A stretch of 64,000 nucleotides of DNA, from assembly GCF_040938485.1 (NCBI RefSeq), contig NW_027271461.1, positions 372,001 through 436,000 on the forward strand, written 5' to 3'. Position 1 is the first letter of the stretch. The number at the start of each line of letters is the position of its first letter. The notes under the pieces are model-generated. The model ran no database searches, was not told the DNA's origin, and saw nothing but the letters and a program-made list of their open reading frames with translations. This DNA comes from Diadema antillarum (lineage: Eukaryota). Below are positions 4,169 to 30,100 of this stretch, piece after piece. The position numbers were made by a program, and so were the translations under genes.

Positions 4169-7100
4169 GTAACTGTCTGATTGCTGCCCTCCACCCCCTC
4201 CCCCATTTTACATTATTTTGTATACCCTCTACAATCCCCCTATATGCTACACGTTAAACTTGTAGGGACCCATGTCCCTATATCGTTATACAATACTATA
4301 TAGTACTTGTATAAGTCGAAGTTGATGTCCCTGTCAATGCCAATGTCCGTATTATTATGTCCCTGTCTTTGTTTCTGTTACTATGTCTCTGTATCTGTTT
4401 TGTCCTATATAAATAAGCCATATCCTCGGTTTTTTATTTTTATTCATATGATACTGCATATCGAATTTAATACTTATGTAAAGTCACACGCGTCACAAGT
4501 CTTTGTACTTAATTAGAGATGCGCCCCCAGCATGTTCAAATTGACCGCATGTTGCATGTATACTTATATATTCCTATTTGCTGGAAATAAATGTCATTGA
4601 ACTTGAACATTAATGGTCGTATAAAACATACAAATTACACAGAAACTGGAGGAAAGCAGATGATGATGGAAAACGAGAAAGTTCAGTTGGGATTTGGTTA
4701 TGTTATTGGATATGCCTATTAAAGAATACATGCGATGACTTATTCGAGTCTCAGCTGAGTAATGTTTTCAATAAAGCAGCATCGGACTAGTTAGCAGAGG
4801 AAAAGATGCAGAGAATTATCATTCAAATGACACATAGGCCTACATGGACGACTTGCGGGGCTTCAGTGAAGTGCGAGGCTTCAGTGAAGTGCGAAATGCA
4901 AAGTAAGCCTTAAATATCGTCATCTAATATTAGAAGCCATTAGTGATAATGTCGCAGTGAACGTTGTGATAATTCAATGCTTCGGGATAGGAATCCACGA
5001 GTAAAGTGTGGTCCCATGGAGAGTATGATTCTTTCAATAATGGGTATAAACAATGAAAAAATAAACATGTATTATGCAAGCAGAATTTAGAGTTTAATGA
5101 ATAGTTCGTAAAATGTGTCTCAAGAAAATAATCACAAGAAGGAAAACTGTAAATATAAAGGATGTAAAAGCATTACATCTATTGGTATCGATTACCCGAG
5201 TTACAAGAGCTGTCCTGGAGGATCTGTGATGCTTGATATTTATCTTGTATACGATACACCCTCATTCTGTTGGTCTTTTTTGATGACAACGAGAAATGTA
5301 TATGATTGTATCCCAATCAAATGTGGGAAGAACGGCATGTTGTATTTAGATACATTAGCGCACGGCGCAAGATTTTGACGTACGGACCTAACTATATAGA
5401 CTGACAACAATGATAAAACCCGTAACTTCAAAAGGAGTTGTAAACAGTACATCTCGCTGTATTTTAAGACATACACAATTTGTCGGTCTATAGTAACTGT
5501 TGTATATTGATTCAACATATTCATTGCAGTGCGTATTATAGTTGAGTTTTAAAAGTTATATTTTAAGACATAAGACATTTTAAGACATAACTATGGGACA
5601 CTATTGTCGGTCTATCCAAGATTCAACATATTCATTGCAGTGCATACTATTATTCTAGTTGAATCTACACACATCGACAATAATGATAAAACCTTATACA
5701 TTGTACGTTAAAATACAGTTGTCAAAAACACATCTCGCTATAGTTTATGGCACATGCCACAGTGTTAATACGTGTAGTTGAATGGGGCAACTTTAAAAAT
5801 CATATCATATTCTTCATAATAGATTATTACGTGCACACTTTTGTTTGTGATCAATGCTTACTTTTATTGTTTTTTATTTATGCGGCCTTCAACGGTTTGC
5901 TGAAAATGAGTCTCGTCTGATCGTGTATTCCACTCTGAGCCTTGTCTCAGACTGCACTGAATAAGTGGTCCAAAGATGCGCTTTCAATCTGATGGTGTGT
6001 ATCTCTGATATCATACAATGTTGGTAGGCCTACCACCATCGTTTAAACGTCTCAACAGAACTATTGTCAACACGATTACAAATGCGTTTGAGCATTGGGA
6101 AAATGCATTTTTTTTTTAAACGGAAAATACAATATCTTTCCAGGACGAAACTCTCCCTCTTTTTACCTAATTTCTTAATTTTACGATCCTGTCATAATAA
6201 GGCGAGAACATCAATATCACATTTTTCATAAGCGATTGTTACCCATCTCGCTTTGTTTTCACCGGGAACACCTTTTACAGTTGACGACTCTAGTGTACTA
6301 CAAAGTATATTATGTTCTCTTTGGTCGAGTCAAAAAGCTGGAAAGTTGTTTAAATTCCACTCACGTCCAGTCTGATCCCAAGGGTCTCGTGAACAAATTA
6401 GTCAATGAGGTTCAAGAGATGAGTTCCAACGAGCAACAGTTATTTTTACACATCTGCCAGTTTTCTGCATGGATGCTCAAAATAGTTCACAGGTGCATTG
6501 TGTCTTTGATCTTGGCGTTTAATGCTGCTATCTTTCTGAGCAATTTGAAGATTCATTTTAACAGCGAACATAATATCGAGTACATTTTGCTTGTTTATTC
6601 GTTGAATTGAATAATCCTCCAGCCAATGATAAAATACATGTATATGAAACAAAAGTCAGTCAGTCAGTCGAAAAATGTTGGCAAAAGTGTAAATGTGAGC
6701 TATATGTTGTGAAGTGTTTGAATAATATTGTACCTTCCTGGAAACCAGATTTCATCACTATTCCAATGATTAAGACAAATGCAAGTGAGTGGTAAAATAT
6801 TCAAATATCAGTTCTTTATAAATTAATACGTCAGATTCTTGTCCAGACAATGTCCAGACGAGTAGGGCCTTGTAGGTTGGTATATACACACACAAAGTAT
6901 TCACATTTATATATAAGTTCATAAAGCTTTTTCGCGTTAAACTAGACAGACAATACAACATTTTCCTCTCCCTATTAAAATTCCGGTCAACTGCATGCAA
7001 CAAGATTTATGTAGCTTATTTTATACACTTTATTTAAAAAAAAAAAACATCCGTTACGGCCACGCTATAAATAAGCAATCACACAAAGAGTTGTTATTTA

Positions 7101-8840
7101 ATGTGATTTCAGTTTTGTTTATTTCACTATTTGTATAAAATTTCATCCCGGTGAACGAATGAAAAATGCAGTACTGTACAATGCATGATACCAATTACTG
7201 TATTCTAAAAGAGCTTCCAACGAACATTCGTATTACGGGGATGGTGTGGCTATTACACACTATATACAGTAGGTCATCAAGATTTTCGTTAACGAGACAT
7301 ACAAACGCTTTGACCTGCATCATTCAAAGAAACGTCAGAAAATGGCGTGTATTTTCATTTCGTCATTGTTGAAACCACATATAAAAAATAACCACGACTA
7401 AAGTGTACACATAGCGCTGCAAATTTGTTTTGACAACTAAACAGTATGTATTGATATCATGTTTATAACTTGCCTTATAATAGTGTTATTTTTCACGATT
7501 TTTCCCCATGGGAAGCATATCGCATACATCCAACATGATTATCTTTAATGTAAAGATCTGAAGCCATGTAATAGAAAAATAAAAGCGATCAATATACATA
7601 TCACAAGAACGTGGCAGTTTTGACTCGATTCTCCCATATCACTCCCCACAGCCGAGTGTTGATGACCTATTAGCACCTGACTTGGTAACTTTCACACAAC
7701 AGAATATGCCCTTAAAGTGATTTATGCGGCATAAGTTAAAAGATATTCACAAGATCATTTTATAAGTACTAACAGGCTGAGTGACAGCGTTATATGATAA
7801 TATGAACATAAACATCGAACAATACAAATTCTTTTTTTTTTAGTCGAAATCACATGCTACCTGCACTGATAGTGTTCTGATACACAATACTAATTAGCAT
7901 GAAAAATCGCTTAGTCGATTGTAACTCGTAGAATTGATCCTTCGTATATCTATTACAGCTCCACATCTGAGTTCAGCATACAGTGTTCCTGTTTGGCATG
8001 GACAAAATATTGCTTGATTCATTTCTTTGGTATAGAAGTTGCCAGGAATTATACCCGAAAAATGTAATAGGCTCGAATCCCTTGAAATGACACATTGACA
8101 TTTAAATCAATGGCAGACACATTGACATTTAAATCAATGGCAGACATCTTTCAAGACATATCTTTTCAATTCAAATTGGTAGGATCCTTACGCACCGTTT
8201 TCAATCCGGTTTTTTTTTTCTAATATCAATAAAAACATCACAAAACATCCGTGTATTTTGCGATGTATGAAAAGAGATAATTAAGATGATGCTAATGGTG
8301 ATGAAGATGAAAGAAAGTACACGCTATACACAAAATCAATGAAAATCTATGTTCGGGCCAACGAGATATACAATTTGAATGTCATTATACCCTATCTAAC
8401 AAGGGATGAGGCCACTTCAAAAGAGAGTGGCTTTGACGATGCTCGAGCAACTGTCGAGTGGAAATCTTGAAAACTCCTGAGCTTCATTATATCATTATGA
8501 GTGAAATGACCACAGTGTCACATTATCTAAGTTCCATTTCTCAGTGAATATCATGCTCTGGATATCTTTTTTAAAAGAAAAATAACAATAATTATTTATC
8601 ATCAGACAGAAAGGGAAGATAATTATGCTGAACGTGTACAATTTTGTCAAGGGGTAAAACCTTGATCTGCCTTTGGCGACCTTTGAGGTGTAATCTGCGC
8701 AGATTAGGGCAGGATGGAAAGGAGGATGTGCTTTTGCGCGCGTCCTAATAGAAGGTGTCTGTGTCTTACCAAACAGCACTTAATGGTGAAGTGAGTTTTT
8801 TTTTTGTTGTTGTTGTTTTTCTAGTTCTTTTTATTTTGCC

Positions 8841-9132
8841 TCAGTCCTGTTTGGGCTTACTACTTATCATACGTCTACATGTCAGTTTGCAGCAACGACA
8901 GGTTAATTTGCACGTGTAGTAAAATATGACGACAAAAAGCAGAAAGCAGGTGAAAAGGAAAGCATAGACATCTATCAGGTAAAGTTGCACAAAGTTCAAA
9001 TCTTTGACGGGTGAGCGTAGGTCTTTCCCACCGTATTTCATGACATGTTCCACCCAAAAGGCAGCCCGATCAGCAGGGGACTGTGGCCGGTCGCGGTAGA
9101 TTGCAGACAGTCGCTTTGCCGTTTTCATGTAC
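8841..9132 (-). CDS. UGT constant exon 3 (last; TM helix and ER-retrieval tail)
   Basis: Acceptor catgtag|G; YMKTAKRLSAIYRDRPQSPADRAAFWVEHVMKYGGKDLRSP...hydrophobic helix...KPKQD*; 292 bp. Confidence 0.95.
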
Positions 9133-9549: not shown

Positions 9550-12420
9550 TGCATTTATATGGCGCTTTATACTGGTGTTTCTAAGCGCATTGGTGCTATT
9601 CATACACAATGAAAAAAAGTACGTGTGATACAGTGATACAATAATAAATGACTGACTGGGTGCGCCTCCAGAAAAAAAAATAATATGGCTGTAAGTTTGA
9701 TATGCTACTCATTGACGCTATTTGACTTTCATTGAAAGCAGCAATCACATCTAATACGATGTAACTTCAAGGACACAAACTACGGCGGAGGATACGAGTT
9801 TCGACTGCAATTTTATACACCTGTATAAAACAAGAGACCCGCGGGTATAGCGCTCACCTGAGTATCGCAAGTTCACCTTTCACGCAGTCACTAATCTAAA
9901 TTATTCACAGCTCTACCAAAATTTGACCAGGCATTCTCAAGTAGAAGATGAAAATGTACAATAAATGCCAAAATTTTTAAAGATTCCTTAATTTGGGGGG
10001 ATTGGGGCCCCCTGGGGCCCTCTGGGTGGGGCATGGTGCCCATTTTGATAAATTGAGATCCTGACCCCCTAGGGATGCTACCTGCCAAGTTTGACGAAAA
10101 TCCATCATGATGTTTTCAGGAAGAAGATGAAAATGTACAATTCAGGTCCCTATTTGGACCTTCCCAACCCCCCCCCCCCCCCCCCTGCCCCCAAGAGGGG
10201 CACCCCTGGATCTGCTATGAACAAACTTGGAACTACAGTCATTAATGTACTCACTCATAGTATTATCTTAGCTCTGAGCATAGTTTCTGATTCTAGAGAA
10301 GATTTTTAAAGATTCCTTTTTTTGGGGGGGGGGTTTGGGCCCCCTGGGGGCCCCCTGGGTGGGGCATGGTGCCCATTTCAACAAATTGAGATCCTTAACC
10401 CCCTAGGGATGCTACCTGCCAAGTTTGGTGAAAATGGGTCATGGGGTTCTCAAGAAGAAGATAAAAATGTACAATTTAGGTCCCATCAGGTGAGCTAAAA
10501 AGCGTCGGGAAGTGCTAAGGTGATGCGCAAGTTTACCAGCTCCGACTAAGCCCAGGGCACTGTTTCATGAAAGTTGTTCGCCCTGACAAGTTGTCAGTCT
10601 CTGATAATTCCAGTAAAATCCTTGGTTTTGATTGGCTGAGAAGTTCGGTCACGGACCGTTACTACGGTAATTGTCAGACTGACAACTTGTCAGGGCTGAG
10701 AACTTTGCTGAAAAGGTGCCCTGGTTTGTTCTAGTACACTCACGTGTTGTTTTGGGTGACAGTGTTAATAGCCGCCTCCAAATTCTCTGCAGTGATGGAG
10801 TGGATACTGAGTGACACGCCCATTCCCTTTTCCGTCACTCTAGCTGCTACACTCAGCTGATCGGAAAACACTGGTAGCACCACGATGGGTACTCCGTGGT
10901 ATAAGGCCTCGTACAAACCGTTGTTACCGCCCTGATACATGAAAAGCCTTGTTTGGGGGTGACCTGTAAATACAATAATCATTATTCGACTTATTTGCGA
11001 TGAGAGATGGGTAAACGTATTAATGTGTGCAAGACGTTTCTTGTCGCTACCTCACAACACACCGTGGCTTCAGATCATCAGTGTGTGCGCTACAGGCCTA
11101 CGCAAAGAAAGGTTAAAAAATCTTTCAAAGTTTTAATACTAATTTCAGGGCAGGTGCATTTCTAACGGAAATGAAACATGCATTCCCAAAGGACCATTTC
11201 ATAAAGGGGGTTTACATTATCGGCAGATGCAAGAATTTTTGTTGCAATAGATATAAAGATATTCAATCACCAAGTGCCGTGTGAATAAGTTTTCACCATG
11301 CACAATTTGAAGTGCAACTATTGCAGCTTAAAATGAGATTGTAATCGCAAACATTCTTAAAACGCGCCCACGACATCATTTCTGTCGTTTCTGCTTCATT
11401 CTACACTTGGGCCAATTAATGCTCAAACGTGTTTGTATATTTATGCATACATCATGCAGATGTACTCAAAGTATTATATGATTAAAATGAAAATATGATA
11501 AGGTTCATCAATTCGAAAATGTATAGAGACGGCGCGCACTAACGAACCTTATTTCATTTTCGGATTATTGAACCTTTGGAATAATCAACTATAATATAAT
11601 CGATCTGCGTATATAGATTTATGTGCGGAACAATAGTTTCTCTATAGGTGTGTGCCAATCACACAGAATCACTACACATGATACTTATGCTGAAAAGCGT
11701 AAATAATAAAGCATCAAGTCAGAAGAGTGACTTTACCAAGGAGATCATTTTGAGGCAGCCATTCCATGGTCTTGATGTTGTCTGCAAGTTTTGTCGGAGT
11801 CCCGTCAGGAAGCTGCCACACCACTTTCTGCGGAAGTCTCGCAAACACGGAGGCGAAAAGATCGTTGTATCGCTGCGGCATGGCCTTGACGTATGTCCCC
11901 AAGGAGAACACAATGACGCCCTCATCGCCAGCACTATTCATGAAGTCATCGAGTTCCTACAGGAGAATTGGTTCAAAGAATAGAAAGCGACGATTCAAAG
12001 GGGGCATTCCAGACGATTTTCGTAATCATGTAGTACATAAATCAGAAGTTCCATGTATAGACTTGTGGTATTTAATTCAAATTATTGTGGCCCTTGAGTA
12101 TAGAGATACCAATAATCTGAAAATCTTAAACAAATTACATTGAACAGTCGTGATGACTCAGAAGCCTCACATATTTAAGAAATGTATAAATGTAATATTA
12201 TTCCATTACAAAACTGGTTGCTTAACAACTTCACTTGTGTACAATCTATTCGTGCCCCCTTATTTTGCGCTGCTTCCTGGAGCCCCAACTCATGCGTTCT
12301 TCTGGTGAGGCTGCCATGTTACCATCCTCGTTCATTGCAATGTTACAAATTTTGAGAACATTATCATTCCTCATTCCAGTCTCTATAAATTCTGAAACTC
12401 TGTACTCAGTACATTTATAA

Positions 12421-14348: not shown

Positions 14349-17300
14349 TGTATGTACTGTTCTAATAGGTCCTTATCTTATATTACCATGCAGTTTACAT
14401 GCATATGTGTGTTTGGGTTTGTTCGCAAAAGCATTATAAAACCAGAGGTGACGTATTTCTTCTTTATGTTTTAGTACACTTTCTTATGGAGAACCCTAGC
14501 TGAGACTTTAATGATACGTACCCGAGTTAATTTGTTGGCAGGCCTTGTCAACAGGCCACCAACTTCAATGACTGATGGAGGCATCGGGGCCACTAAATCG
14601 ATCACAGGATCGGAGTTTGTCAACGTCAGTACAGACTTTTCTAAAAACTCTGTCATCGTCTGTTCTTCCATTATACCGAACTCATGACGAAGGGGATTGG
14701 CAATTCCCACAAAATATTCCATGATGAAGTACCTGGCCAAAACGGTTATGATCAAACTCTTGAGTCTCTGCCAAAAGTTCATCCTCTGTGGAGTGCCAGA
14801 GAGGCCTTCGGGGATGACTGCAGGCATGAATGGTGCACCGGCGAGTTCTGCTACGGAGTATTGGGAAGCTAGAGGATTATAGAAAACGGTTGGAGTGCCA
14901 ACATACGCGTTTAAAAGGATGCTGCATCCCCATGTAATATCAACGATAGTGATGTCAAACTTTGCATCACGTAACCTTCCCATCAGCGCCTCGTCGCTGA
15001 GAGCCGCCCGACAGTCCCAGACTAATGGCATTAGCCATTTCGACGGGGATAAAATGAGATCGGTGTTAAAATCTGCCTGGAAGGCAAAGGCTGCAATCTC
15101 ACGCGTGCGTCTGTACACCTTCTCCACGGGAACGGAGTGGTTGAAGATCTCGTAGCGAAAGAGTTTGGAGTGTACAGGATGTCTTGCACGGTACTCGTAT
15201 GCATTGCTAATCAGGTAGGTGACGTTGTGACCCCGCTTCACCAGGGCTTCGCCGATAGCTGTGGACGAGACGTAATGGCTACCCTCACCGTAAGTTACGG
15301 TTATGAACACGTTGAAGGGTAAAACACCAGCAATAAGAGAGGCAAAGACAAGTAATATGGCTTCATGTCGATCCGTCCGTATCATTCTTACCCCCATTGT
15401 GACTGAAAATTTGCCGCCAATCATCAAAATTACGCGATGTGTATAATTATTACACTAATCTCCGACAGGGAAAGGCTTCCAGCTAATTCACGTAGGGCCC
15501 ACTGTTAGTGCTTCGATCGCTTTTCCCGCACGTGTTATACGGAAGCTATTTTTGCACTGCCCGGCCACACTGTTTGCTTACTCGCTTTGATCAAACAAGG
15601 TCAGGGCATAAGCCGAAATTCACACGCACATTTTTATAGGGCCTATCATGTTCATTGCCACTATACTACTGCAACTAATGTCGTTCAAAACGGATCCCAC
15701 ATAGGCATGAATTCATGAGATCACAATATTAGCCACTCATCCGACAACCAGGACAACCGTGGAAACGCAAATTATGCAAAAGAAAGAAATTTCCATATTG
15801 CGATATTCAAATCACGTGGATATCACTTCTATTGTCCACTTTAGTCAAGAGTGAACATTTCCACTCATTTTCTTTTCTCGAGAGAGTATACCTCTTTAAG
15901 ACGATGTTGGCACTGAAGACGATAGTCACATAAGACGATAAGCACCACTGTCTCAATACCATACCACTTGATAAGACAATATAAACCACTTCCAGTGAAG
16001 ACAAAGTATAAGTACATTGTTAAAATGTGTTCAGCCTGTAGGCAAACCGAAAGACTGTTTTAGGTGCTTGCGTATAGGCTATAATAATAACTATCCACGG
16101 AAGGATTATAGTAGCAGATTACCATACATCGATGTGCACAGAGTACACCACGAAGAATCCTCATTATTACATGCATGACTTCCCTGCTTGGAAATTTCAT
16201 TTGACATGCTTGGGGTGTTCAGGGTTTCCATAGCACACACACTACACACAAACACACGTACAATCCATATCATAGAAGATGCCTGTTGAGATTTGACTTA
16301 TTAAAAGTTATAAGAAGCTTTGTCAAAGACGTTATTTTCTTCATTCTTCGCTAATGCTTTTGCAATCGACCCCTTTTATCATTAATCTAATGGAATTATA
16401 GCTTTTGGAAATGCATGATAACATGACTTGTATCCCTTTTTTAACATGTCTGTGTCGCTAAACAGGAAAATAGTGATAAACAGGGGCTTAATTTCCTGAT
16501 GGTGTAAATAAACATACCATATATTATATTATATAGCAAAGAATCTCTCATCTGTATCATCCACATGTTGACTGAATGGTTTCGTATTCACATAGACCTA
16601 ACGTGAGATTCTTGTCAGAGTGGGGAGGGAGAGTAGGCCTATAGAAGACATAATACTCAGTGTGTACATAGCAATTGCTTACTATCGCTTAAAATATTCC
16701 CCATCGAAATTTGACATACATGTATGGAGCTTTAACTGAACTATGACACATCAGTATCAGTAAATCAAAAGCACGTGATGTTTAATGTACACGCTCGTGA
16801 TCTTTGCCCCACGTCTATCAGGGAAGTGTTACAAATAAGTAACACCGATATCACCGAGTACACTGCAAAAAGTCCAGTGTTGAATAGTGAACACCGAGCT
16901 GGTGTTAAATTTTCGGTGCTCATTTATGGTGTTAGATTAACACCACCGGGTGTCATTTCCTAATTTTAAACTGTTTTTTGAAGAGTTTCTTAGTAACTGC
17001 ACTTCTTGTTGATTTTTAATTCAAACAAGACGATCAAGAATTTTACATTAAAATACTAGATTTTTGAAAAAATGTGAAAATGAATTTACACCAAAGTAAC
17101 ACCAGCTGGTGTGGTCTCTTATTGAAGCTGGACGGGTGTTAAACCATTGATATTAACACCAACAAATATCAAATCAACACCATGTGGTGTCATTTTTGAA
17201 TTAACACCAGTACAGTGTCAAAATAACACCAGGTACAGTGTCAAATTAACACCACTAAGTGTCAGGTGAACACTTTTCAACACCATCACAGTGCATTTTT

Positions 17301-20300
17301 AACACCTGTGGGTGTGGTCCTCTATTGAAGTTTGATCGGTGTTAGATTTAACACTCGTGGTGTTAAATCTAACACCGATGTTTTTACAGTGTACCTCTTT
17401 CTGTGCCAATGGGTCAAACCTTCACACTCATGGCCTGGAAATCAATGTGGCAAGAAGAGGGTTAAATGGCCGTCAGTTTTTCTCAAGCAGTCACTATAGT
17501 GAGCTCACGAGCATATAGCGAGACATTGAGACAGAGCAATAAAAACGTTTGAACCACGATGCATACTGTTACAAAACGTTTATCATTTTGTTCTGTAGTT
17601 ACGGAAATACAATGTATTTCTCTTAATCAAAAATGTTTTGCAAAAAAAGAGGGATTTCAACATAGCTACGGCTATATAATTCCTACCCTGTGGTTTGTTC
17701 ATCTTGCTTAAATAACAATGGATAACCCAATATTTGATACCTTTTCTACCGGTAGAGCTGGCCTTGTAAGAAGTCCGCCAACTGCGATGACGGATGGTGG
17801 GAAAGGAACAATACAGTCTATCACTGGGTCCATGGCCATAAGAGCTAGATGAATGTTTTCTAAATATTCTACCATAGATTTGTCTGTCATGAGGTGAAAC
17901 TCTTCCCTCAAGGGGTCAACCAGGCTAACATACCAATAGAACATCCGCTTCACCATAACCAACGACACTGCATTGGAAACTCGCTGGAGGAAGGTCATAC
18001 GCTGTGGAAAATCAAACAGTCCTGGTATTACAGCCGGAAGAAAAGGTGCTCCTGAGAGCAAATTTGCCACGTAATACTGGGACGCCATGGGGTTGAGGAG
18101 CACGTTGGTTGTATTCAGGTATCCACTGAGTAACAGGCTACATAGCCACGTGGTATCGAGAATTGTCACATCAAATTTGGCGCGTAACAGGCGATCCATA
18201 AGATCTTTGTCTCCCAGAGTGGAGCGACAGTCTTCTATGTAAGGAGAGATGAAATTAGAAAAGTTGACTAACAGATACCACTCAATACGCCACTCAAGAG
18301 CACATTTTACAGCTGCATCTGGTCTATTCTTCACTTCCTCAGCGGGAAATGGATGTTTGAATATTTCAAACGTGAAAAGTTTTGAGTGGATTGGATGATG
18401 AGCGCGATGTTCGAAGGCATCACCGATCAGAACCGTCACGTTATGTCCGCGTCGTACGAGGGCTTCTCCCACAGCAGTGCCCGCCATGTAGTGGCTTCCC
18501 TCTCCAGCGGTTGCGGTGATAAAGACATTACCACCTGATGAAAGCGACACACAACCAGAGACTATCGCCCCTATCACGAGAATTGCTTCCCTGATTTTGT
18601 ACATCATACTCATGGATCGTACTTATGGTTGTATCAAAGTTATGTAAGCATCGTATGCGCAACACATAAAACAGTGATCTTTCACAATCACATCGTGTGC
18701 AGGATCCCCACTGTATGATAAAGCACGTCAAAGCGCTATCCATGCGTAGTCTACTTTCCAGGCGGTCTATTCATTCCAAAATCTGTCCCAACTTCCAAGT
18801 AACTGTAGGTGTGAAACGCTTCCACGTGAAAAAAAGACTATCCAAAGTAGAAGTTATTCTTAATCTTCACAGAAAAACTAGCGTTACTTTGAATTTACAT
18901 TACACCACTCTCTTATGGGTTCCCATAACGGTTAATGCTTTTTATGAAAAATGTAGGGTCCAAAGTTTCTGTCTATATGGACTATTTTATATGTACACAC
19001 ATCATTTTTACTAATATGTTCGTTATTCCTTTCTTGATATTGCGTCATGCACTGTGTCAGGACACGGGGAAAAGACACTGACAGGTAAAATACAATTTAA
19101 ACTATATAGGAAGTCAATATTAACGTCACTTTGTAAATGATATAACTGCAGTGTCACAGATTATGAGATTTTATGTTTGTTTGGGTTACAGATAATAACA
19201 ATAAGCTCTACACCATTAATTTATCAAGTCATTAAAGGCACTATTCACCATTTGCAGATGCAACAAAAACACTGCTTTAGTGCTTCAGTTTTTAAATGTG
19301 AGTTAGGGATAGAAACAATCAATGTAAAAAAATGAATAAGTATAAGCAATGGTAATTATTGTTAAATATACAAAGTATGAACAATACTTGTAACAAAATG
19401 TTTCTAGACTAAACCGTCTATACGGTTATCATAATATGGTTTATTGAGAAAATAGTGATCTCCTTATATTTTAGGCTTTCTGGCGAAATTTTTATATGGT
19501 AGAATGTTTTGTGATATAACTAAATTACACTAAATACTTCGAACTTTTTATATGGCTGCGCCCAATGGTAAACAGTTTACCTTTAAACATAATGACATTC
19601 ATAGTCTATTTAAGTCCACAGTTGCCCATGACTCATCACATACTACATCCTTCACTGCGCTGACTGAATCTAACTTACCTAGACACAAGTATATACCCAA
19701 TGAATATATCAAATGGTGAACACTTTGAGAGAAAAGGAGTATTGCTTACCATGATTCAGAATAAGGTTTATGATCGATATAAAATTCGGGAGTGTGAAAT
19801 GTCTCTTAAATCACTCTTTCGCAATTGGATAGCCAATAACAATGTAAACATTGCCTTTATACACAGGCCACGATAGCGAGTTCCGTAAAACCAAATAGGG
19901 TCCTACATTTACATGACAATCTCATCTTCAACCACAAAACAAATCAAACAACCCAGAAACAACTTGAACTACCCTAAAAGCGAAATGATACTTCACCTTG
20001 TTTAGTTGTTGAGCTGGCTTTGTAAGCAATCCACCGACTTCAATGACAGAAGGAGGGAAAGGAACGATAAGATCCATCACTGGATCCATTGACATCAGAA
20101 TAAGGGAAAAGTTTGCCATGTAATCTGAGACAGATTTGTCTTGAAGTATGCCAAACTCGTCTATAAGTGGATTAATCAAAGTCCCGTACAGGTGGAATAA
20201 CTGTTTTAAGACAGTAAACCAGACTACATTGGTCACCCTTTGGAGGAAGGACATTCGTTGTGGTAATCCGAGTATTCCTCCTGGTATTACAGCGGGAAGA

Positions 20301-23300
20301 AAAGGTGCACCTGAAAGTAAATTTGCTATGTAATACTGGGACGCCATGGGGTTGAGGAGAATGTTGGTTGTATTCAGGTATTCACTGAGTAAAATGCTAC
20401 ATAGCCACGTGGCATCAAGGACTGTCACGTCAAATTTGGCGCGCGACAGGCGATCCATGAGATCGCGATCTCCAAGAGTCGCTCGACAATCCTCAATAAA
20501 TGGAGAATATATTTCGCTGAAATTCGTAATCAGTTCTAGATTGAGAGTCTGCTTGAAAGCCTGGCTGATTATTTTTTCCATTCGTGCGTGTACCTCATTA
20601 GCGGGAAATGGATGTTTGAATACTTCAAATTTGAAAAGTTTTGAGTGGATGGGATGGTGAACGCGATGTTCGAAGGCATCACCGATCAGAACCGTCACGT
20701 TATGTCCGCGTCGGACGAGGGCTTCTCCCACAGCAGTGCCCGCCATGTAGTGGCTTCCCTCTCCAGCGGTCGCGGTAATGAAGACATTGCCACCTGATGA
20801 AAGCGACACACAACCGAAGACTATCACACCTATCACGAGAATTGCTTCCCTGATTTTGTACATCGTACTCATGGATCGTACTTTAGGTTATAAGGCACCT
20901 ACAGTGTATTTATGCGCAGCACATAAAAACACTGAGCTTTAAAAATTTTTCACAATCACATAGTGTGCAGGGTCCCCGCTATACAAAAACACGTCACAGC
21001 GCTATCCGCTCGTCTACTTTCCAGGTGTTCTATTCATTTCAAAATCATTGGCCCGTATTCACGAAATGAAGCCATGGTTTGAACCTTGGTTTAAACTATG
21101 GACAAAAACGATGGAGCGCCAAGTTTAGTGTCGCAAGGAATATTTCGTTACGAAATTGGTCATTTCGTTGACAAAATAACCGTTTTGTTAACGAAATCAC
21201 CATGGACGAAATGTTCATTTAGTTACAGAATGTTGTCATATCGTTACAAAATAATCATTTCACCGACGAAATGACTGATTTCGCAACGAATTATTCCATG
21301 CGACACTTGGCGCTCCATGGTTTTTGCCCATGATTTAAACATGGTTTCATTATTTTGTACCACCTTCGTGAATTCGGGCCATTGTGTCCCAACTTCCAAG
21401 TAAAACACTGTGGGTGTGAAACGCTTCCACGTGAAAAAAAAAAAAGACTATCCAAAGTAGAAGTTATTCTTAATCTTCACAGAGAAACTATAGATTTACT
21501 TTGAATTTACATTACACCACTCTCTTATGGGTTCCCATAACGGTTAATGCTTTTTATGAGAATTGTAGGGTCCAAAGTTTCTGTCTATGGACTATTTTAT
21601 ATGTACACACATCATTTTTACTATTATGTTCGTTATTCTTTTGTTGATATTGCGTCATGCACTGTGTGAGGACATGGGGAAAAGACACTGACAGGCAAAA
21701 TACAATTTAAACTATAATGTAGTCAATATTAACATTACTTTCTAAATGATTTAAACTGCCGTGTCACAGACTATGAAATTTCGTGTTTTTTTAAATCTTA
21801 AGCTAATACAGATAATAACCATTATTTTTTAAGCTATAAACCATTTATCAAGGCATTAGAGGCACTATTTACCATTTGCAGATGCAACAAAAACCCAGCT
21901 TTAGTGCTTCAAAATACTTCTGAAAGTAATGTGAGTTAGGGACAAAAACAATCAATATAAAAAAACTGAATCAGTGTAAGCAATGGTAATTATTGTTAAA
22001 TATACAAAGTGTGAACAATAGTTGAAATAAAATGTTTCTAGACTAAACCGTCTATGTACGGTTATCATTTTATGGTTTATTGAAGAAATAGTGATCTCAT
22101 ATTTTAGGCTTTCTTGCGAAATTATTATAAGGTAACAGAATATTTTGTGATATAACTAAACTACACTAAATATGCATTAAATGTGATACCTCGAACATTT
22201 TTTTAGTGGCTGCGCCCAATGGTAAACAGTATACCTTCAGACATAATTCATATACAGTGTATATTATAGTCCATTTAAGTCTATGACAATTACTCATGAC
22301 TCATCGCATATTACATCCTTCACTGCGCTGACAGAATCTAACTTGCCTATCCAACACAAGTATACCCAAAGAATATATTGTATGGTGAACACTTTGAGTA
22401 AATGAGTATTGCTTACCATGATTCCGAATAAGGTTTATATTCGATATGAAATTCAGGTGTATGAAATGTCTCTGAAATCACTCTTTCGCAATTGGAGAGC
22501 CAATAAAGTCTTTGCCTCTATACGCAGGCCATGATAGCGAGTTACGCTTAAACCAAAGAGGTTTGAGAAATGGAGTAACAACAGTCTCATTTCCTTTGAT
22601 CCCATGTTTCATGCCGCCACTCAAAGATATTTGAAGTACGTGGTAAACTGGCGATGCCCCACAGATAGGAAGACAATTGATTCATGTGTCATTGCATCAT
22701 GACTCGTCACTCTCAAAGGAAGATATGTCTTTATGATGATAATTGATTTTCGCCGTCCCTTCTTAGAAAACAAGCGGCACATTAATAGCACAGGCACGGG
22801 GATGTGCGAATAAACATTTTACAAAAATTGATGAAATGAAAATCAAAATTACTCATTTTTACATGACTTTACACTAATCTAACATATAGATGTATAAAGA
22901 ACAATACTCGAAAATTACACCATATCAGTTTCATTTGTCGGAAGCGATCGGAAAGATGATAAAATCAGCTTTGTAGTGGGGGTACAGTTACAGATATTTT
23001 CACGACATACAGCTCAGGTTTACATTTTTGCGCATAATCTTGGACGGGATTTACTTTTGTTTCATATGCTTTATCATTAAGAGAACATTCATTCTATTTG
23101 ACAAATAAACAAGCAGAATATAGACGATAGAATGTTAGAGTTTAAAATGAATCTTCAGATTGCTCAAAAAGACGGCGGCATTGAACCCTGATCATCAAAG
23201 GCACAAGTGCACCTGTGGAATTCTTTTGTGCATCAATAGAAAAATGGCAGCTGTTTGAATAATTACAGCCAGTTGGAACTCCAGCTCTTAAACCTCCTTG

Positions 23301-24254
23301 CTTAAACTAAATAGGGTCCTACATTTACATGACTCCTCCCCCACAAAACAAATCAAACAACCAAGAAACGATTTGAACTACCCTAAAAGCGAAATGATAT
23401 TTCACCTTGTTTAGTTGTTGAGCTGGCTTTGTAAGCAATCCACCGACTTCAATGACAGAAGGAGGGAAAGGAACGATAAGATCCATCACTGGATCCATTG
23501 ACATCAGAATAAGGGAAAAGTTTGCCATGTAATCTGAGACAGATTTGTCTTGAAGTATGCCAAACTCGTCTCTCAGTGGATCAATAAAAGTCCCATACAG
23601 GTGGAATAACTGTTTTAAGACTATTAACGAGACTACATTGGACACCCTTTGGAGGAAGGTCATACGTTGTGGTAATCCGAGTATTCCTCCTGGTATTACA
23701 GCGGGAAGAAAAGGTGCACCTGAAAGTAAATTTGCTATGTAATACTGGGACGCCATGGGGTTGAGGAGAATGTTGGTTGTATTCAGGTATTCACTGAGTA
23801 AAATGCTACATAGCCACGTGGTATCAAGGACTGTCACGTCAAATTTGGCGCGCGACAGGCGATCCATGAGATCGCGATCTCCAAGAGTCGCTCGACAATC
23901 CTCAATAAATGGAGAGAATAATTCACTGAAATTCGCAATCAGTTCTAGATTGAAACTCTGCTTGAAAGCCTGGCTGAATATCTTTTCCATTCTTGCGTGT
24001 ACCTCATCAGCAGGAAATGGATGTTTGAATATTTCAAATTTGAAAAGTTTTGAGTGGATGGGATGGTGAGCGCGATGTTCAAAGGCATCACCGATCAGAA
24101 CCGTCACGTTATGTCCGCGTCGGACGAGGGCTTCTCCCACAGCAGTGCCCGCCATGTAGTGGCTTCCCTCTCCAGCCGTCGCGGTAATAAAGACATTGCC
24201 ACCTGCTGTCAACGAGAAAAGCATACATAAAATCAATATAATATGCCATTCCAT
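8841..24254 (-). CDS. UDP-glycosyltransferase locus: four alternative first exons sharing three constant exons (products about 526-535 aa)
   Basis: V exons 24254-23406, 20872-19997, 18613-17741 and 15397-14522 each join in frame to 11956-11737, 10963-10744 and 9132-8841. Products carry a signal peptide, catalytic GSH, the UGT signature WLPQNDLLGH...DQ, a TM helix and a KxKxx tail. Confidence 0.85.
9469..9549. repeat. (ATA)n microsatellite
   Basis: About 27 aat/ata units. Confidence 0.95.
9828..10501. mobile_element. Helentron/HINE (DINE-1/pearl-like) non-autonomous element with internal tandem repeats
   Basis: Starts aaacaagag...gctcacctga and ends tcaggtgagctaaaaa (subterminal inverted repeat). 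Contains about three internal units with gaagaagatgaaaatgtacaa and cccctagggatgctacctgccaagttt. Confidence 0.65.
10552..10724. mobile_element. Short MITE (cagggcac...gtgccctg), copy 1
   Basis: Terminal inverted repeats plus internal tgacaagttgtcag palindromes; related copy at 55187-55326. Confidence 0.7.
10744..10963 (-). CDS. UGT constant exon 2 (UDP-sugar binding signature)
   Basis: tttacag|GT [38 protein letters not shown]...QNNT, AC|gtgagt; 220 bp. Confidence 0.95.
11737..11956 (-). CDS. UGT constant exon 1
   Basis: ctcctgtag|GAA: ELDDFMNSAGDEGVIVFSLGTYV...WLPQNDLLG, G|gtaaag; phase-0 acceptor; 220 bp. Confidence 0.95.
14270..14345. repeat. Compound (CT)n(TA)n microsatellite
   Basis: Direct reading. 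Confidence 0.9.
14522..15397 (-). CDS. UGT variable first exon V1 (aglycone-binding N-domain)
   Basis: Signal peptide, GEGSHY, KFDITIVD, PPSVIEVGGLLTRPANKLTR, CGG|gtacgt phase 0. The start could also be 15427 or 15385. Confidence 0.92.
16861..17391. mobile_element. CMC-EnSpm-like (CACTG) MITE, copy 2, inverted relative to copy 1
   Basis: ta|cactgcaaaaag...tttttacagtg|ta, 2-bp TSD TA; about 95% or more identical by eye to 3298-3828. Confidence 0.85.
17741..18613 (-). CDS. UGT variable first exon V2
   Basis: MSMMYKIREAILVIG signal peptide, GEGSHY, ...GGLLTRPALPVEK, AAG|gtatca phase 0; intact 291 codons. Confidence 0.92.
18614..19996. repeat. Inter-exon spacer copy S' (duplicate of 20873-23405)
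   Basis: Collinear with 20873-23405 (e.g. ccacgtgaaaaaa.gactatccaaagtagaagttattc, ctagactaaaccgtcta) apart from two large indels. Confidence 0.9.
19236..19582. mobile_element. Kolobok-like TTAA MITE in spacer S' (paralogous copy 21860-22236)
   Basis: ttaa|aggcactattcaccatt...aatggtaaacagtttacct|ttaa: imperfect TIR with TTAA TSD; present in both spacers, so it predates the duplication. Confidence 0.6.
19997..20872 (-). CDS. UGT variable first exon V3 (V2-type leader, V4-type body)
   Basis: MSTMYKIREAILVIG..., GEGSHY, ...GGLLTKPAQQLNK, AAG|gtgaag phase 0; intact 292 codons. Confidence 0.92.
21050..21380. mobile_element. PIF/Harbinger-like palindromic MITE in the V3 upstream region
   Basis: att|ggcccgtattcacgaa...ttcgtgaattcgggcc|att: 16-bp TIR, 3-bp TSD ATT; absent from the paralogous spacer; related copy at 54908-55129. 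Confidence 0.8.
21860..22236. mobile_element. Kolobok-like MITE in spacer S
   Basis: Paralog of 19236-19582 with decayed TTAA ends. Confidence 0.55.
23406..24254 (-). CDS. UGT variable first exon V4
   Basis: MEWHIILILCMLFSLTAGG signal peptide, GEGSHY, ...GGLLTKPAQQLNK, AAG|gtgaaa phase 0; intact 283 codons. Confidence 0.92.
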
Positions 24255-25148
24255 AGCAGTTCTGTGATGGTTGTTGAAGCAACATAGGTCAAACATTTTG
24301 AATATGGTGCACTTGTGGTGCAAAGGATTTCCGTGTAGTGATTTCTTCTCTTCCGGTGTCTCGGCGCGGCGACCAGCATACAGCTTTTCGTGATTGAGTG
24401 ATCAAAGTGTGTTGCACGCGAATTGATGTCAACATACTAGCCAGCCGCGAGCGCGAGGTTTACTTGTACATGTACACTTGACGGTTGATAACGAACGTGC
24501 ACTCGGCACTCCAAAATCTCCATGGCACATTTTCTTTTCACTGTCCACCCCCACCCCTCCCCGTTTTTATGGCAAGCCAAGTGTGTGTAATATGCATTGT
24601 CTTGTTCACGGTGGTTTCTGCAATAGCTCCGAATCGGGTGTTCTAAACGCTGAACCACTTACACAGTTATGTAGTGTTAGAAGAACACGATGAAACAGAT
24701 CTGTGTTCCTATTCGCATGTGAATTTAAGATCAGGCTCAAAACATGACTCGATCATCTATATTTTTCTTGTATTGCTTGAAGGTCTTTTTTTCTTTTCTT
24801 TTCTTTGTCTTCTGTTCTGGTGCATGGATAATGTACATTTATTAGTCCGCCAACATTGTAAGATATCACAGTATAGAAGTTAAAATTGCAGGCACACAGC
24901 TCAAGAGAGAGAACAGACGGAGAGATTGTATGGAGTGAGATATGGCAAGCATGGCATGATGGCATATCCCTCAGTGAAGGGTTTGACAGATCTAATGTTT
25001 CGATTTCCCTTGGGGAAGGTTATACTCCAAACAGTTCTGCTTATACTCACGGGGGCCCCTAGAAGGAGGAAAGGCCGCCTCTGTATGCTATTAACCACAA
25101 TGATGGCAGTTTGTATAGTTCATGTATGGTGTTTGTTAGGCTTGTTAA

Positions 25149-25716
25149 AGGACAAGTTCACCTTCATAAACATAAGGATTGAGAGAATGCAACAATATTA
25201 GTAGAACACATCAATGAAAGTTTAAGGAAAATTGGACAATCGATGCAAAAGTTATGAATTTTTAAAATTTTTGTGTTGGAACCGCTGAATGAGGAGACTA
25301 CTACAGCTTGTGAGTCATATGCGTACAACAGTATAAAGAAAATGTAAAGAAAATTCAACATATTTTCACTTTTTTCGCATAATCAAAGAGCACTTGACTT
25401 GACTCTTTCTAAAGGCAGGGGGAATAATATTACCCATAACATTTGTCGGTAACGAGTCGGGGGAATGTGTACTTTTTGCAAAAGATGAAATTTTGTGAAA
25501 TTCTCTTTATATTTTCCTTATATTGTTGTACGCATGTGACATCTAAGTTATTCACACACTGCAGTAGTCTTCTCATCCAGCGGTTACTGCACAAAAACTT
25601 CAAAAATTCATAACTTTTGAACGGATTGTCCAATTTTCCTCAAACTTTCAATGATGTGTTCTACTAATATTGCTACATTCTCTCAATCCTTATGTTTATG
25701 AAGGTGAACTTGTCCT
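25149..25716. mobile_element. Kolobok-like MITE with long (about 125 bp) TIRs
   Basis: ttaa|aggacaagttcaccttcataaacataaggattgagag... and ...ctctcaatccttatgtttatgaaggtgaacttgtcct|ttaa; TTAA TSD, purine-purine start. Confidence 0.85.
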
Positions 25717-25847
25717 TTAATGCGGCAAATGCATCAAAATAAAACGACTATCCATCCTGCCCTCGCCGCGAGAGGACGTCAGCCAATGTGAACAAGTTTT
25801 CTTCTACTAGTATTCTTTTGTACTGCCACTCCCGAGGTAAAACAAGA

Positions 25848-27198: not shown

Positions 27199-30100
27199 GT
27201 AAGTTAACAGTCTTACTTTCATGCGCTTCCATGTGCTATCATGGTCATGCATACGTCTTTTTTTTTTGAGAGAGAGAGAGAGCAGGTGATTTGAGGGCTA
27301 ACATCTCTGTAATGTCTTACCATGTAGTTACCGTATGCGATACCTACATATACGATATCACAATGGTAACAGGACGTACGTAGTATTATGGTCATAGCCG
27401 GTAATAAAGTGCCTCAAAGTACTTCACGCTGCACAGAAGTGATCCTGCTACTGTCCCTGCTACAAAATCATCTAGAAATGCACATGCACTGCATAGAATG
27501 TTCCTCTGAAATGTAAACTGGGCTACGTAGTTGTTCATCTGAAAAATTAATGTCACGTATATCTGGCTAGTTAGCGGAATTCGAAAATATCTATTAAAAA
27601 AACGGAAGAAAAACATTATTTAAATATGAAAGCTACATCTCTGGATTGGTCGTCTGTGTGCCATCGATTGCTCAGAAATGATACATGTACTGTCATATCA
27701 ATCATAAGAATTTAATATAATTATTATCTATACCATCATCTTTTCAGAATTTCACAACCCTATCTACAAAGAAGTTACTGCATGAAAGTCGACTTCTGAA
27801 CTTCAGATGAGATAATACGTTATATATTCATTGCATGTGAACGTATTTTGATCCTTATATTCGTGAGATTAGTAAGGAAGCATCACAATACCTATCTTGA
27901 AATAGGGAAAGAATGAAGCAGCTTTATCTAGACGCGTCAGTAGACGATAGCTACACATGCAATATGTAAATAAGAAGGGCTTATGACCTGGAATAAAGAT
28001 TAGGTAGAAAGGCAATTTCAGTTCTTTTTCAACAGCACACATGCCACATAATAGATGAATAACTTAATTAAAATACAGGTAGATTTATGGCAACAAGGCA
28101 TGTACTGGTTTACTGTACTAATTTAACAGATTGACGAGCTTTTAGACATTTGAAATCATGGCTGATTAAGAGACTATCGCAGTCGATTAACACCAATAGC
28201 ACAGTCTTTTGATAATAAATCGTACGCAAATGCATCGCACGAGCGTCTTAAGGGCTTTTTACACTTGTGTTTCTTAACCCCGGACTTTCTCTGACCCAGG
28301 ACTATCGTTAGTCCCGTACCAATTTTTTCAGCTTTTTACACTCGCCAATTAGTCCCGTACTATCTCTTGTCCGGGGCTAAGGAGAAAACTGACCTTTTTA
28401 CACTCGTATTTCTTAGCCCCGGACTTTCCAAACCCCATGAATATTCATAATTACGCTGTGTACTGTACACGTACACGCACGCACCGGCAGCACTTGATTA
28501 CCTCGTTTCTGATTGGTCAGTGAGGGTCGGACTTCGTCTCCGTCGCTTAGCCCAGGATTATTTTTTCGTTCTGTTTACACTCACTTGCTTGGCACCGCAA
28601 TTGCGGTGCTAACCCCTGCTATTTTGCAGGGCCAGATAGTACCGTACTATCGGTGGGGCTAGCCCACTTTGGCAAAAACGAGTGTAAACAGAAAGTGGGC
28701 TAAGGATAGTCCCGTACCAACGGTGGGGCTAAGGCCCCCCCCTTAGCCCCACCGTTGGTCCGGGGCTAAGCAAAAATTTACAAGTGTAAAAAGCCCTTAA
28801 CTTTTTCTTTTAAAGGACAAATTTGTTTGGTTATACATTTTCGTTTTTCAAATTCCATTAAACCGTCTTATCTGTCTAATAATAATATCTCTATATTTGA
28901 TAGCTATATAGGGTGATTCCATTGAGAACTGAAGAAAAGTTAAGGAGAGAATTTCTAAATCATTACCATCCCATCTGTCGTCATGTACTAGAGCCAAGCG
29001 AGTGTTTAGACATGTTTATCAGCATACACGTTTGAGAAAGTATGAATTGGCTAGTCCACATAAAATAATGACTTCATTAAGATTGACATTTCCTTATAGC
29101 AGAAAATGCAAATTAAGCAAAAACTTTTAGCACTTTGGGCAATTTTGCACTGTATCATTAAGTAAACATGTTCCTACAATATCTGACAAAATGATGACTG
29201 CATTTGCTCCATACTTGTGGAGACTTAATATGTTGGTCACGAGTAAATGATAAAGAAAAATATTCAAAGTCCATTTCTGGTAATATCTACCACATAATGT
29301 TAAAGAAGCATATTCAAAGTCCATTTCTGATAATATCGACCACATTGGCCATCTATTTACAGCGTAAACCTTGAACAGCACGTTGGTATTATGAACGTTG
29401 GAATTTGGAAGTGTTTGGGTCAGTAAGGTCACACAATCACTACTAGTATGTCAAGAGACGTCAATAACAAATCGTCACCTCCTGAATCAGGAGGAAAGAG
29501 GATGCATGTACTAGTACTCGACACGATCTCTCGTTTTATGCCAATATGCCGTATGAAATGTTTGCGCAATTAACATAATTTTACAAGTATATAGAGAGGG
29601 CCGAGGGATTGGTTTTAAAGCAACTATACGGTGCACTTGATCGGCAACACCATATATAACACACAGTTATGGACTCACCCAGTTNNNNNNNNNNNNNNNN
29701 NNNNNNNNNNNNNNNNNNNNNNNNNNNNNNNNNNNNNNNNNNNNNNNNNNNNNNNNNNNNNNNNNNNNNNNNNNNNNNNNNNNNNNNNNNNNNNNNNNNN
29801 NNNNNNNNNNNNNNNNNNNNNNNNNNNNNNNNNNNNNATGTTTAAAATTTTCATTTTGATATACAAATATAATCATAATCACGTTTTTATGTTTGCATCA
29901 GAAGTCTCCACGAATCCCCTTATTGTGCTAAAGGCCAAAAAGTGATTGAAAACGAATCATCGTACCATAGCAGTTGCTGCCATGAGGCAAATATATATAC
30001 ATTATGGATGTATAATATATATTTTTTCAGCTATAGTTTCGATTTGAAACGAACTCGAAATCAAACTGATGGCTGTATATAGACCTGTTGAAGCCTGCGT

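What the first reader, a model, noticed from the sequence alone, without database searches (positions are those of the whole stretch)
17741..24254. V3 is a chimera of V2 and V4 created by unequal crossing-over
Seen: V3's leader (MSTMYKIREAILVIGVIVFGCVSLSSGG) and upstream DNA match V2, while its mature domain and downstream intron flank match V4 (e.g. HARMEKI.SQAFKQ, PAVIPGGILGLPQ, KPAQQLNK|VKYHFAF). The spacers V4-V3 (20873-23405) and V3-V2 (18614-19996) are collinear copies. Inference: misalignment of V4 with V2 in an ancestral V4-S-V2 array gives exactly V4-S-[V2 5'/V4 3']-S-V2, with the breakpoint near the end of the signal peptide (about 20600-20795). The result places a V4-type substrate pocket under a V2-type promoter, a captured birth event of a new cassette.
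Basis: partly seen in the sequence, partly recalled or inferred. Interest (0 to 1): 0.72.

Follow-up and report, generated by a model that had tools for sequence, protein, structure and literature searches.

The report
Hybrid first exon in urchin UGT
In a sea-urchin detoxification-enzyme gene with four alternative first exons, the third exon really is a hybrid of its two neighbours made by misaligned recombination, but it is an old, fixed duplication shared by two Diadema species and since blurred by gene conversion, so it is a tidy textbook case and not a fresh birth event.

Summary
The window is Diadema antillarum DNA. On the minus strand it carries a UDP-glycosyltransferase gene with four alternative first exons (V1-V4) and three shared constant exons.

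- **Hybrid exon.** V3 matches V2 at 22 of 24 informative sites in the leader. It matches V4 at 176 of 182 sites in the mature domain (MaxChi permutation p<1e-4).
- **Spacers.** The V4-V3 and V3-V2 spacers are collinear copies. They differ by two later transposon insertions.
- **Junction.** It is in frame and in register. It lies in a ~190-nt block where V2 and V4 are nearly identical, at about window 20597-20797.

An in-register tandem duplication by unequal homologous recombination between V4 and V2 is the best explanation (about 0.7).

It is not an assembly artefact. An independent D. setosum assembly has the same V4-V3-V2-V1 array with the same hybrid V3.

"Captured birth event" is overstated. 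The duplication predates the species split. V3 and V4 have since exchanged sequence: within-species synonymous divergence (dS) is 0.07-0.08, against 0.12-0.17 for orthologues. So the original crossover point and age cannot be read cleanly.

V3 evolves under relaxed constraint, and it carries a frameshift in D. setosum. Expression was not testable. The scan has noted the same UGT layout on other pieces of this genome.

The parts
23406..24254 (-). V4 variable first exon (own leader MEWHIILILCMLFSLTAGG; parent of the V3 body)
   Evidence: ORF and Pfam UDPGT. Donor AAG|GTGAAA. The RefSeq model P0001 contains it at 100% identity.
20873..23405 (-). Spacer S_A (V4 to V3), a collinear copy of S_B apart from two transposon insertions
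   Evidence: blastn self-comparison and piecewise MAFFT alignment.
22562..23303 (.). 742-nt dispersed-repeat insertion in S_A, specific to the D. antillarum lineage
   Evidence: Partial copy at 6403-6837. Read depth is 10^3-10^5 times the single-copy level. Absent at the orthologous D. setosum site.
21047..21384 (.). 338-nt palindromic MITE-like insertion in S_A, specific to the D. antillarum lineage
   Evidence: Self inverted repeat 21089-21340, with copies at 54908-55128. Very high read depth. Absent in D. setosum.
19997..20872 (-). V3 variable first exon, the hybrid (292 codons, intact ORF, donor AAG|GTGAAG)
   Evidence: The RefSeq model P0002 joins its donor to the constant exons.
20789..20872 (-). 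V2-type leader of V3 (signal peptide)
   Evidence: 6/84 differences to V2 against 23/49 to V4. The leader tree groups V3ant, V3set and V2ant with support 90/89.
20597..20797 (-). Interval that must contain the original crossover: the 5' mature block nearly identical in V2, V3 and V4
   Evidence: Site-by-site list for both species. V2ant differs from V4set at 3/176 sites, with identical runs of 98, 44 and 35 nt.
19997..20596 (-). V4-type body of V3 (acceptor-binding part)
   Evidence: V3-V4 differ at 25/616 sites against 189/613 for V3-V2. The body tree puts V3 with V4 and apart from V2.
18614..19996 (-). Spacer S_B (V3 to V2), copy of S_A
17741..18613 (-). V2 variable first exon (parent of the V3 leader and upstream flank)
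14522..15397 (-). V1 variable first exon (old, orthologous to S. purpuratus Vc; outgroup for the analysis)
   Evidence: The D. setosum model P0008 joins the V1 orthologue to the constant exons.
11737..11956 (-). Constant exon 2 (acceptor TAG|GAACTCGAT, phase 0)
   Evidence: Matches P0002 exactly.
10747..10963 (-). Constant exon 3 (UGT signature region)
8841..9132 (-). Constant exon 4 (transmembrane tail and stop codon)

Best explanation
The locus is a Diadema antillarum UDP-glycosyltransferase gene built like vertebrate UGT1A. It has four tandem first exons, each with its own start codon, signal peptide and 5' splice site, followed by one set of three constant exons.

In an ancestor of D. antillarum and D. 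setosum the array was V4-S-V2-V1. V4 on one chromatid mispaired with V2 on the other. They exchanged within the ~190-nt block at the start of the mature domain, where the two exons are almost identical. The duplication product is V4-S-[V2 leader/V4 body]-S-V2. This corresponds to an 'anti-Lepore' type hybrid.

Shown here: the hybrid structure, the in-register unit duplication, its presence in two species, and the later transposon insertions.

Inferred: the exchange mechanism and the exact crossover point.

After the duplication, V3 and V4 (and a short flank) kept exchanging sequence by gene conversion in both lineages, which keeps them ~95% identical. V3 accumulated amino-acid changes about three times faster than V4.
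For: 1. Switch in nearest neighbour: 22/24 versus 176/182 sites, MaxChi p<1e-4. Leader and body trees are incongruent.
2. Homology between the units begins inside V4 at the mature start and ends inside V2. V4's upstream and V2's downstream have no counterpart. The repeat periods are 3409 and 2259 nt, or 2329 versus 2259 without the two transposons.
3. The junction is in frame and in register. It falls in the block of highest V2-V4 identity: dS 0.22 against 0.89 in the body, with identical runs of up to 98 nt.
4. D. setosum (L001) has V4, hybrid V3, V2 and V1 in the same order.
5. S_B-specific indels of 7, 3 and 16 nt are shared by both species, which indicates one origin.
6. V2-, V3- and V4-specific short contigs occur in three D. 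antillarum samples and in a second organism.
7. The units differ by 4-12% plus two transposon insertions, against 2.52% heterozygosity (PMC13511894).
8. Conversion afterwards: dS for V3-V4 is 0.068 (antillarum) and 0.077 (setosum), against 0.165 for V4 orthologues and 0.124 for V1 orthologues (Fisher p=0.017).
9. Species-shared sites number 10 against 1 discordant (p=0.006). A species-shared 14-nt indel lies next to the exon's 3' end.
Against: - Divergence is not uniform across the duplicated unit: synonymous 6.6%, spacer 11.9%, proximal upstream 23%. Heterogeneity chi-square p=4e-9. The 'single event, single age' prediction therefore fails as it stands and needs later conversion and local replacement to be rescued.
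- Because conversion between V3 and V4 is demonstrated, the present switch point could be a conversion-tract boundary and not the crossover itself.
- No genome with the unduplicated V4-S-V2 state was found.
- The short contigs do not bridge the junction.
- No transcript data were available.
Confidence: 0.7

Rival explanations
1. Duplication first, conversion later. An in-register duplication produced a V3 that was V2-like over most or all of its length, with the crossover at or near the exon's 3' end. A later V4-to-V3 gene conversion then overwrote the body, stopping where V3-V4 homology ends at the leader.
For: - Ongoing V3-V4 conversion is shown: dS for within-species paralogues is below that for orthologues.
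- There are 10 species-shared sites against 1 discordant, plus a species-shared 14-nt indel beside the exon end.
- The V3-V4 body looks younger than the spacers at synonymous sites (Fisher p=0.03).
Against: - It needs two steps where one suffices.
- The first step is still an in-register V4 x V2 exchange.
- A conversion tract would have had to cross ~600 nt that were then only ~70% identical (V2-V4 differ at 175/613 sites).
- Both species have the same switch position.
Confidence: 0.2
2. Recurrent origin. V3 arose independently in D. antillarum and D. setosum by the same V4 x V2 exchange at the shared identity block.
For: - Within-species V3-V4 dS (0.068, 0.077) is below orthologue dS.
- Orthology-type sites in the mature exon are few: 5 against 1 discordant, p=0.11.
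- Spacer three-way branch lengths are star-like.
Against: - Three S_B-specific indels are shared across the species.
- V3ant-V3set dS (0.086) is lower than the cross-species V3-V4 values (0.11-0.12).
- The body tree weakly groups the two V3 exons, with support 75/81.
Confidence: 0.06
3. Assembly artefact. Two haplotypes of a V4-S-V2 locus were joined in tandem at the shared block, creating a false V3.
For: [quoted passage not shown] The short contigs break in the shared block and do not bridge the junction.
Against: - The same four-exon array with the same hybrid is in an independent D. setosum chromosome-level assembly.
- Copy-specific contigs for V2, V3 and V4 are present in several samples.
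- The units differ by 12% in the spacers plus two transposon insertions, against 2.52% heterozygosity.
Confidence: 0.02

Closest known systems
Haemoglobin anti-Lepore, red/green opsin and CYP2D6/2D7-type hybrid genes (products of unequal homologous crossing-over in tandem arrays; from general knowledge)
   Same: The hybrid has the 5' part of one paralogue and the 3' part of the other. The junction is in register within a tract of high identity. The intervening DNA is duplicated along with it.
   Different: Here the unit is an alternative first exon inside a single gene, not a whole gene. The product is fixed and shared by two species. It is not a polymorphic or disease allele.
Vertebrate UGT1A variable/constant cluster (Li and Wu 2007, PMC1885805)
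   Same: Tandem first exons of ~285 codons encode the signal peptide and the acceptor-binding domain. Each has its own donor site and joins one shared set of constant exons. The array diversifies by tandem exon duplication.
   Different: The organism is an echinoderm, whereas that paper calls the layout vertebrate-specific. There are three constant exons. The V2/V3/V4 exons are a Diadema-specific expansion. Gene conversion is evident here, whereas it was reported as rare in vertebrate UGT1.
Clustered protocadherin variable exons with gene conversion (Noonan et al. 2004, as cited in PMC1885805)
   Same: Neighbouring variable exons are homogenised in tracts while other parts stay distinct. Within-species paralogues are closer than orthologues.
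   Different: It is a different protein family. Only two exons (V3 and V4) plus a short block shared with V2 are involved.

Membership tests
UDP-glycosyltransferase (Pfam PF00201 UDPGT) | N-terminal acceptor-binding domain matching the family profile | tested here: met
   V1-V4 match PF00201 profile positions 7-264 with E 1e-20 to 1e-28.
UDP-glycosyltransferase (Pfam PF00201 UDPGT) | C-terminal donor-binding domain with the UGT signature, and a transmembrane tail | tested here: met
   Constant exons 2-4 encode WLPQNDLLGHPQTRLF...[13 protein letters not shown] and a hydrophobic tail. P0002 carries PF00201 as a precomputed domain.
Variable-first-exon / constant-exon gene (UGT1A type) | Several tandem first exons, each with ATG, leader and 5' splice site, and one set of constant exons downstream | tested here: met
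   There are four exons with phase-0 donors and a single phase-0 acceptor at 11956/11957. No other UGT C-terminal exons lie between the V exons.
Variable-first-exon / constant-exon gene (UGT1A type) | Each first exon is transcribed from its own promoter and spliced to the constant exons | not testable with these tools
   Only predicted RefSeq models are available: V3(Met97)+constants (P0002), V1set+constants (P0008), and S. purpuratus with three starts and one end. No RNA run held the stretch.
Unequal-crossover (NAHR) duplication hybrid | Single switch of nearest neighbour along the hybrid | tested here: met
   MaxChi is 141 with p<1e-4. Sites split 22/24 versus 176/182.
Unequal-crossover (NAHR) duplication hybrid | Junction in register, in a tract of high identity between the parents | tested here: met
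   The ORF is intact. V2 and V4 differ at 3-9 of 176 sites in the block, with identical runs of up to 98 nt.
Unequal-crossover (NAHR) duplication hybrid | The DNA between the parents is duplicated whole on both sides of the hybrid | tested here: met
   The spacers are collinear from exon end to exon start, apart from two later transposon insertions.
Unequal-crossover (NAHR) duplication hybrid | Uniform age (neutral divergence) across the duplicated unit | tested here: not met
   Divergence is 6.6% synonymous, 11.9% in the spacer and 23% in the proximal upstream region. Heterogeneity p=4e-9. This is explained by later conversion and local replacement, but the prediction as such fails.
Unequal-crossover (NAHR) duplication hybrid | An unduplicated parental arrangement (V4-S-V2) exists in a relative or as an allele | not testable with these tools
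   Only D. setosum (already duplicated) and S. purpuratus (its own separate duplicates) were reachable.
Interlocus gene conversion (concerted evolution) | Within-species paralogues closer than orthologues at synonymous sites | tested here: met
   dS is 0.068 and 0.077 for paralogues, against 0.165 (V4) and 0.124 (V1) for orthologues. Fisher p=0.017.
Interlocus gene conversion (concerted evolution) | Species-shared paralogue sites exceed the discordant pattern and cluster in tracts | tested here: met
   There are 10 against 1 (p=0.006). They cluster at V3 nt 102-242, at 429-511, and at the exon's 3' end plus the flank with the 14-nt indel.

The most novel reading that the evidence does not exclude
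The ~190-nt block at the start of the mature domain may be a maintained 'joint' in echinoid UGT variable-exon arrays. It is kept nearly identical among V2, V3 and V4. It sits exactly at the leader/mature boundary and is preceded by a usable 3' splice site (CATCAG|G). It would allow promoter-plus-leader modules and substrate-pocket modules to be re-assorted repeatedly by recombination. It might also allow re-assortment at the RNA level, by splicing of an upstream V donor into a downstream V exon.
Probability: 0.1. Interest if true: 0.6.

Novelty: new member of a known kind. Interest (0 to 1): 0.33.

Why it matters
This is a clean, two-species-verified example of how a variable-exon array grows. 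A single misaligned exchange makes a new first exon that combines one neighbour's leader and upstream region with the other's substrate-binding domain.

It also shows that in this echinoderm UGT cluster gene conversion is active. That contrasts with what was reported for vertebrate UGT1 (PMC1885805).

The mechanism itself is textbook, so the value is illustrative and not conceptual. The broader point belongs to the sibling finding: a UGT1A-like variable/constant layout outside vertebrates, shared by Diadema and Strongylocentrotus.

Tried and rejected
- **Global MAFFT of the two spacers** misplaced the large gaps. I replaced it with piecewise alignment anchored on blastn HSPs.
- **Long runs of species-shared or orthology-type sites in the spacer** (17 and 14 sites, permutation p about 0). 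I first took these as conversion tracts. They span only 54 and 17 nt, so they are compact replaced or misaligned blocks, and I do not count them as evidence for conversion.
- **Read laying** gave only short Logan contigs. They break in the block shared by V2, V3 and V4, so the hybrid junction could not be bridged. Depth is per contig and says nothing on copy number. Joints such as 19318->22029 lie inside a high-copy repeat and are not evidence for a haplotype lacking V3.
- **No RNA run held the stretch**, so expression could not be tested.
- **The look-up of encoding contigs found no record for P0002**.
- **AU tests on the V3/V4 quartet in the exon body** could not reject any arrangement (p 0.08-0.19).
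- **Literature searches** for sea-urchin or echinoderm UGT variable exons returned nothing relevant.
- The N run at 29685-29837 was left untouched.
Full report
**What is there**

The region lies in a minus-strand gene whose four long ORFs all match the N-terminal half of Pfam UDPGT (E 1e-20 to 1e-28).
- Each ORF starts with an ATG and a hydrophobic leader.
- Each ends at a phase-0 5' splice site: V1 CGG|GTACGT, V2 AAG|GTATCA, V3 AAG|GTGAAG, V4 AAG|GTGAAA.

Downstream there is one phase-0 acceptor (TAG|GAACTCGAT) and three exons at 11737-11956, 10747-10963 and 8841-9132. These encode the donor-binding half, the UGT signature and the membrane tail.

The word-index protein search identifies the source as Diadema antillarum. 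RefSeq model P0002 is V3 (from Met97) joined to the three constant exons at 100% identity. P0001 contains V4 at 100%.

Two other notes of this scan describe the same layout at other D. antillarum loci.

In sliding windows V3 resembles V2 (0.8-0.95) and not V4 (~0.4) over ~300 nt of upstream DNA and the leader. It resembles V4 (0.91-1.00) and not V2 over the mature domain and ~100 nt of downstream flank.

On a codon alignment, 22 of 24 informative sites left of V3 nt ~80 are V2-type, and 176 of 182 to the right are V4-type. The maximum chi-square is 141, and none of 10,000 permutations reached it.

Trees agree:
- The leader groups V3 of both species with V2 (support 90/89).
- The body groups V3 with V4 and away from V2.

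The two spacers are collinear from exon end to exon start. The V4-V3 spacer is longer by 338 nt (21047-21384, a palindromic MITE-like element with copies at 54908-55128) and by 742 nt (22562-23303, with a partial copy at 6403-6837). Both have read depths thousands of times the single-copy level, and both are absent at the orthologous D. setosum sites. They are therefore later insertions.

**Why unequal homologous exchange is the best mechanism**

Homology between the two repeat units starts inside V4 at the first codon of the mature domain and ends inside V2. V4's upstream DNA and V2's downstream DNA have no partner.

A tandem duplication with these limits forces the ancestral state V4-S-V2. 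The junction of the two copies is V3 nt ~80-276. That junction is in frame and in register. It lies in the block where V2 and V4 are most alike: dS 0.22 against 0.89 in the rest of the exon, and V2ant differs from V4set at 3 of 176 sites with identical runs of up to 98 nt. A non-homologous junction would almost never be in register, so homologous mispairing of V4 with V2 is strongly indicated.

Using both species, the crossover is bracketed between V3 nt 76/84 and 276, which is window 20797-20597.

**It is real, and it is old**

The D. setosum chromosome-level assembly (L001, fetched through P0008) has the same order on one strand:
- V4 at 3167-4015.
- A V3 with a V2-type leader and V4-type body at 5452-6328.
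- A 5'-truncated V2 with several frameshifts at 7333-7931.
- V1 at 10028-10903, followed by the constant exons.

Three indels specific to the V3-V2 spacer (7, 3 and 16 nt) are shared by the two species, which indicates a single origin before their split.

Short contigs specific for V2, V3 and V4 occur in three D. antillarum samples from two studies and in a second, related organism. The units differ by 4% in the exon body and 12% in the spacers plus two transposons. This is far above the 2.52% heterozygosity reported for the species (PMC13511894). The haplotype-merging artefact is therefore excluded for practical purposes, although no single read or contig bridging the junction could be seen.

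**It is not a frozen birth event**

Divergence is not uniform across the duplicated unit. It is 6.6% at synonymous sites of the V3/V4 body, 11.9% in the spacers and 23% in the last ~170 nt upstream of the ATG (heterogeneity p=4e-9).

| Comparison | dS |
|---|---|
| V3-V4, D. antillarum | 0.068 |
| V3-V4, D. setosum | 0.077 |
| V4 orthologues | 0.165 |
| V1 orthologues | 0.124 |
| V2 orthologues | 0.113 |
| V3ant-V4set | 0.121 |
| V4ant-V3set | 0.111 |

At synonymous sites the within-species paralogues are closer than the orthologues. The Fisher test on synonymous sites (V3-V4 within D. antillarum against the V4 orthologues) gives p=0.017.

In the four-sequence comparison of the mature exon:
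- 10 sites are shared by V3 and V4 within a species.
- 5 sites support orthology.
- 1 site shows the discordant pattern (10 against 1, p=0.006).

The species-shared sites cluster in three places: the 5' block (six of six informative sites), V3 nt 429-511, and the exon's 3' end. At the 3' end the last 139 nt of V3 and V4 are identical in D. antillarum. There a 14-nt indel in the adjoining flank is shared by both units of one species and absent from both units of the other.

So V3 and V4 have exchanged sequence by gene conversion after the species split. Consequently the V3-V4 identity does not date the duplication. The present switch point could in principle be a conversion boundary, and I give that rival 0.2. 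Recurrent independent origin gets 0.06 because of the shared indels.

**State of V3**

In D. antillarum the V3 ORF and its donor site are intact. Between species V3 has 17 non-synonymous and 15 synonymous differences, against 6 and 27 for V4 (omega 0.33 against 0.06; Fisher p=0.004). In D. setosum V3 carries a 1-nt insertion near nt 486. V3 is therefore under relaxed constraint or is diversifying, and the data do not tell which.

The 'V2-type promoter' claim is only half supported. A block ~170-470 nt upstream of the ATG is conserved at 3-5% both between the V2 and V3 units and between species. The proximal ~170 nt are much more diverged and include a replaced 17-nt block and an 11-nt indel. 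Expression could not be tested.

**Context**

S. purpuratus has three first exons sharing one set of constant exons.
- V1 is orthologous to its third exon.
- V2, V3 and V4 form a Diadema-specific clade.
- The two distal S. purpuratus exons are their own near-identical duplicates.

This is birth-and-death growth of the distal end of the array in each lineage. Li and Wu (PMC1885805) called the variable/constant UGT layout vertebrate-specific and found little gene conversion in UGT1. This urchin locus departs on both counts. The hybrid-by-unequal-exchange mechanism is classical, as in haemoglobin anti-Lepore, the opsin hybrids and the CYP2D hybrids (my own knowledge).

**Verdict**

It is a new member of a known kind, of modest interest.

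Noticed in passing
window 20698-20795 (-), with the V4 donor at 23406/23405: RefSeq model P0001 joins the V4 donor to an internal acceptor in V3 (CATCAG|GTG, exon starting at 20793), exactly at the leader/mature boundary. It then reads V3 out of frame to a stop at about 20697. The same CAG|G is present in V2 and V4. Together with P0002 starting at V3 Met97, this suggests V4-initiated transcripts may run through V3 as an internal exon.
   Followed up: partly
L001:7333-7931 and L001:5452-6328: In D. setosum the V2 orthologue has lost its leader and the 5' mature block and has several frameshifts, so it is a pseudo-exon. The V3 orthologue has a single 1-nt insertion in a T run, which is either a real frameshift or an assembly error.
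   Followed up: partly
window 18784-19080 and 21385-21690: A non-coding block ~170-470 nt upstream of the V2 and V3 start codons is conserved at 3-5% both between the two units and between species, while neighbouring spacer DNA differs by 12-18%. It is a candidate shared regulatory element.
   Followed up: partly
window 19188-19581 and 21749-22339: Both spacers contain an older high-copy repeat (read depth up to 10^5). It was therefore already in the ancestral spacer before the duplication.
   Followed up: no
window 25145-25720: A 576-nt palindromic element (self inverted match, 78%) lies about 0.9 kb upstream of V4. An orthologous copy is at L001:574-1142.
   Followed up: no
window 40682-56935 (-): Large ORFs with many cadherin-type repeats and a long cytoplasmic tail lie here. 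This is a Fat/dachsous-like giant cadherin gene neighbouring the UGT locus.
   Followed up: no
L002:5532-18848: S. purpuratus has three alternative UGT first exons (5538, 10007, 12590) ending in one shared set of constant exons. The two distal exons are near-identical, including their leaders.
   Followed up: partly
   Followed up: no
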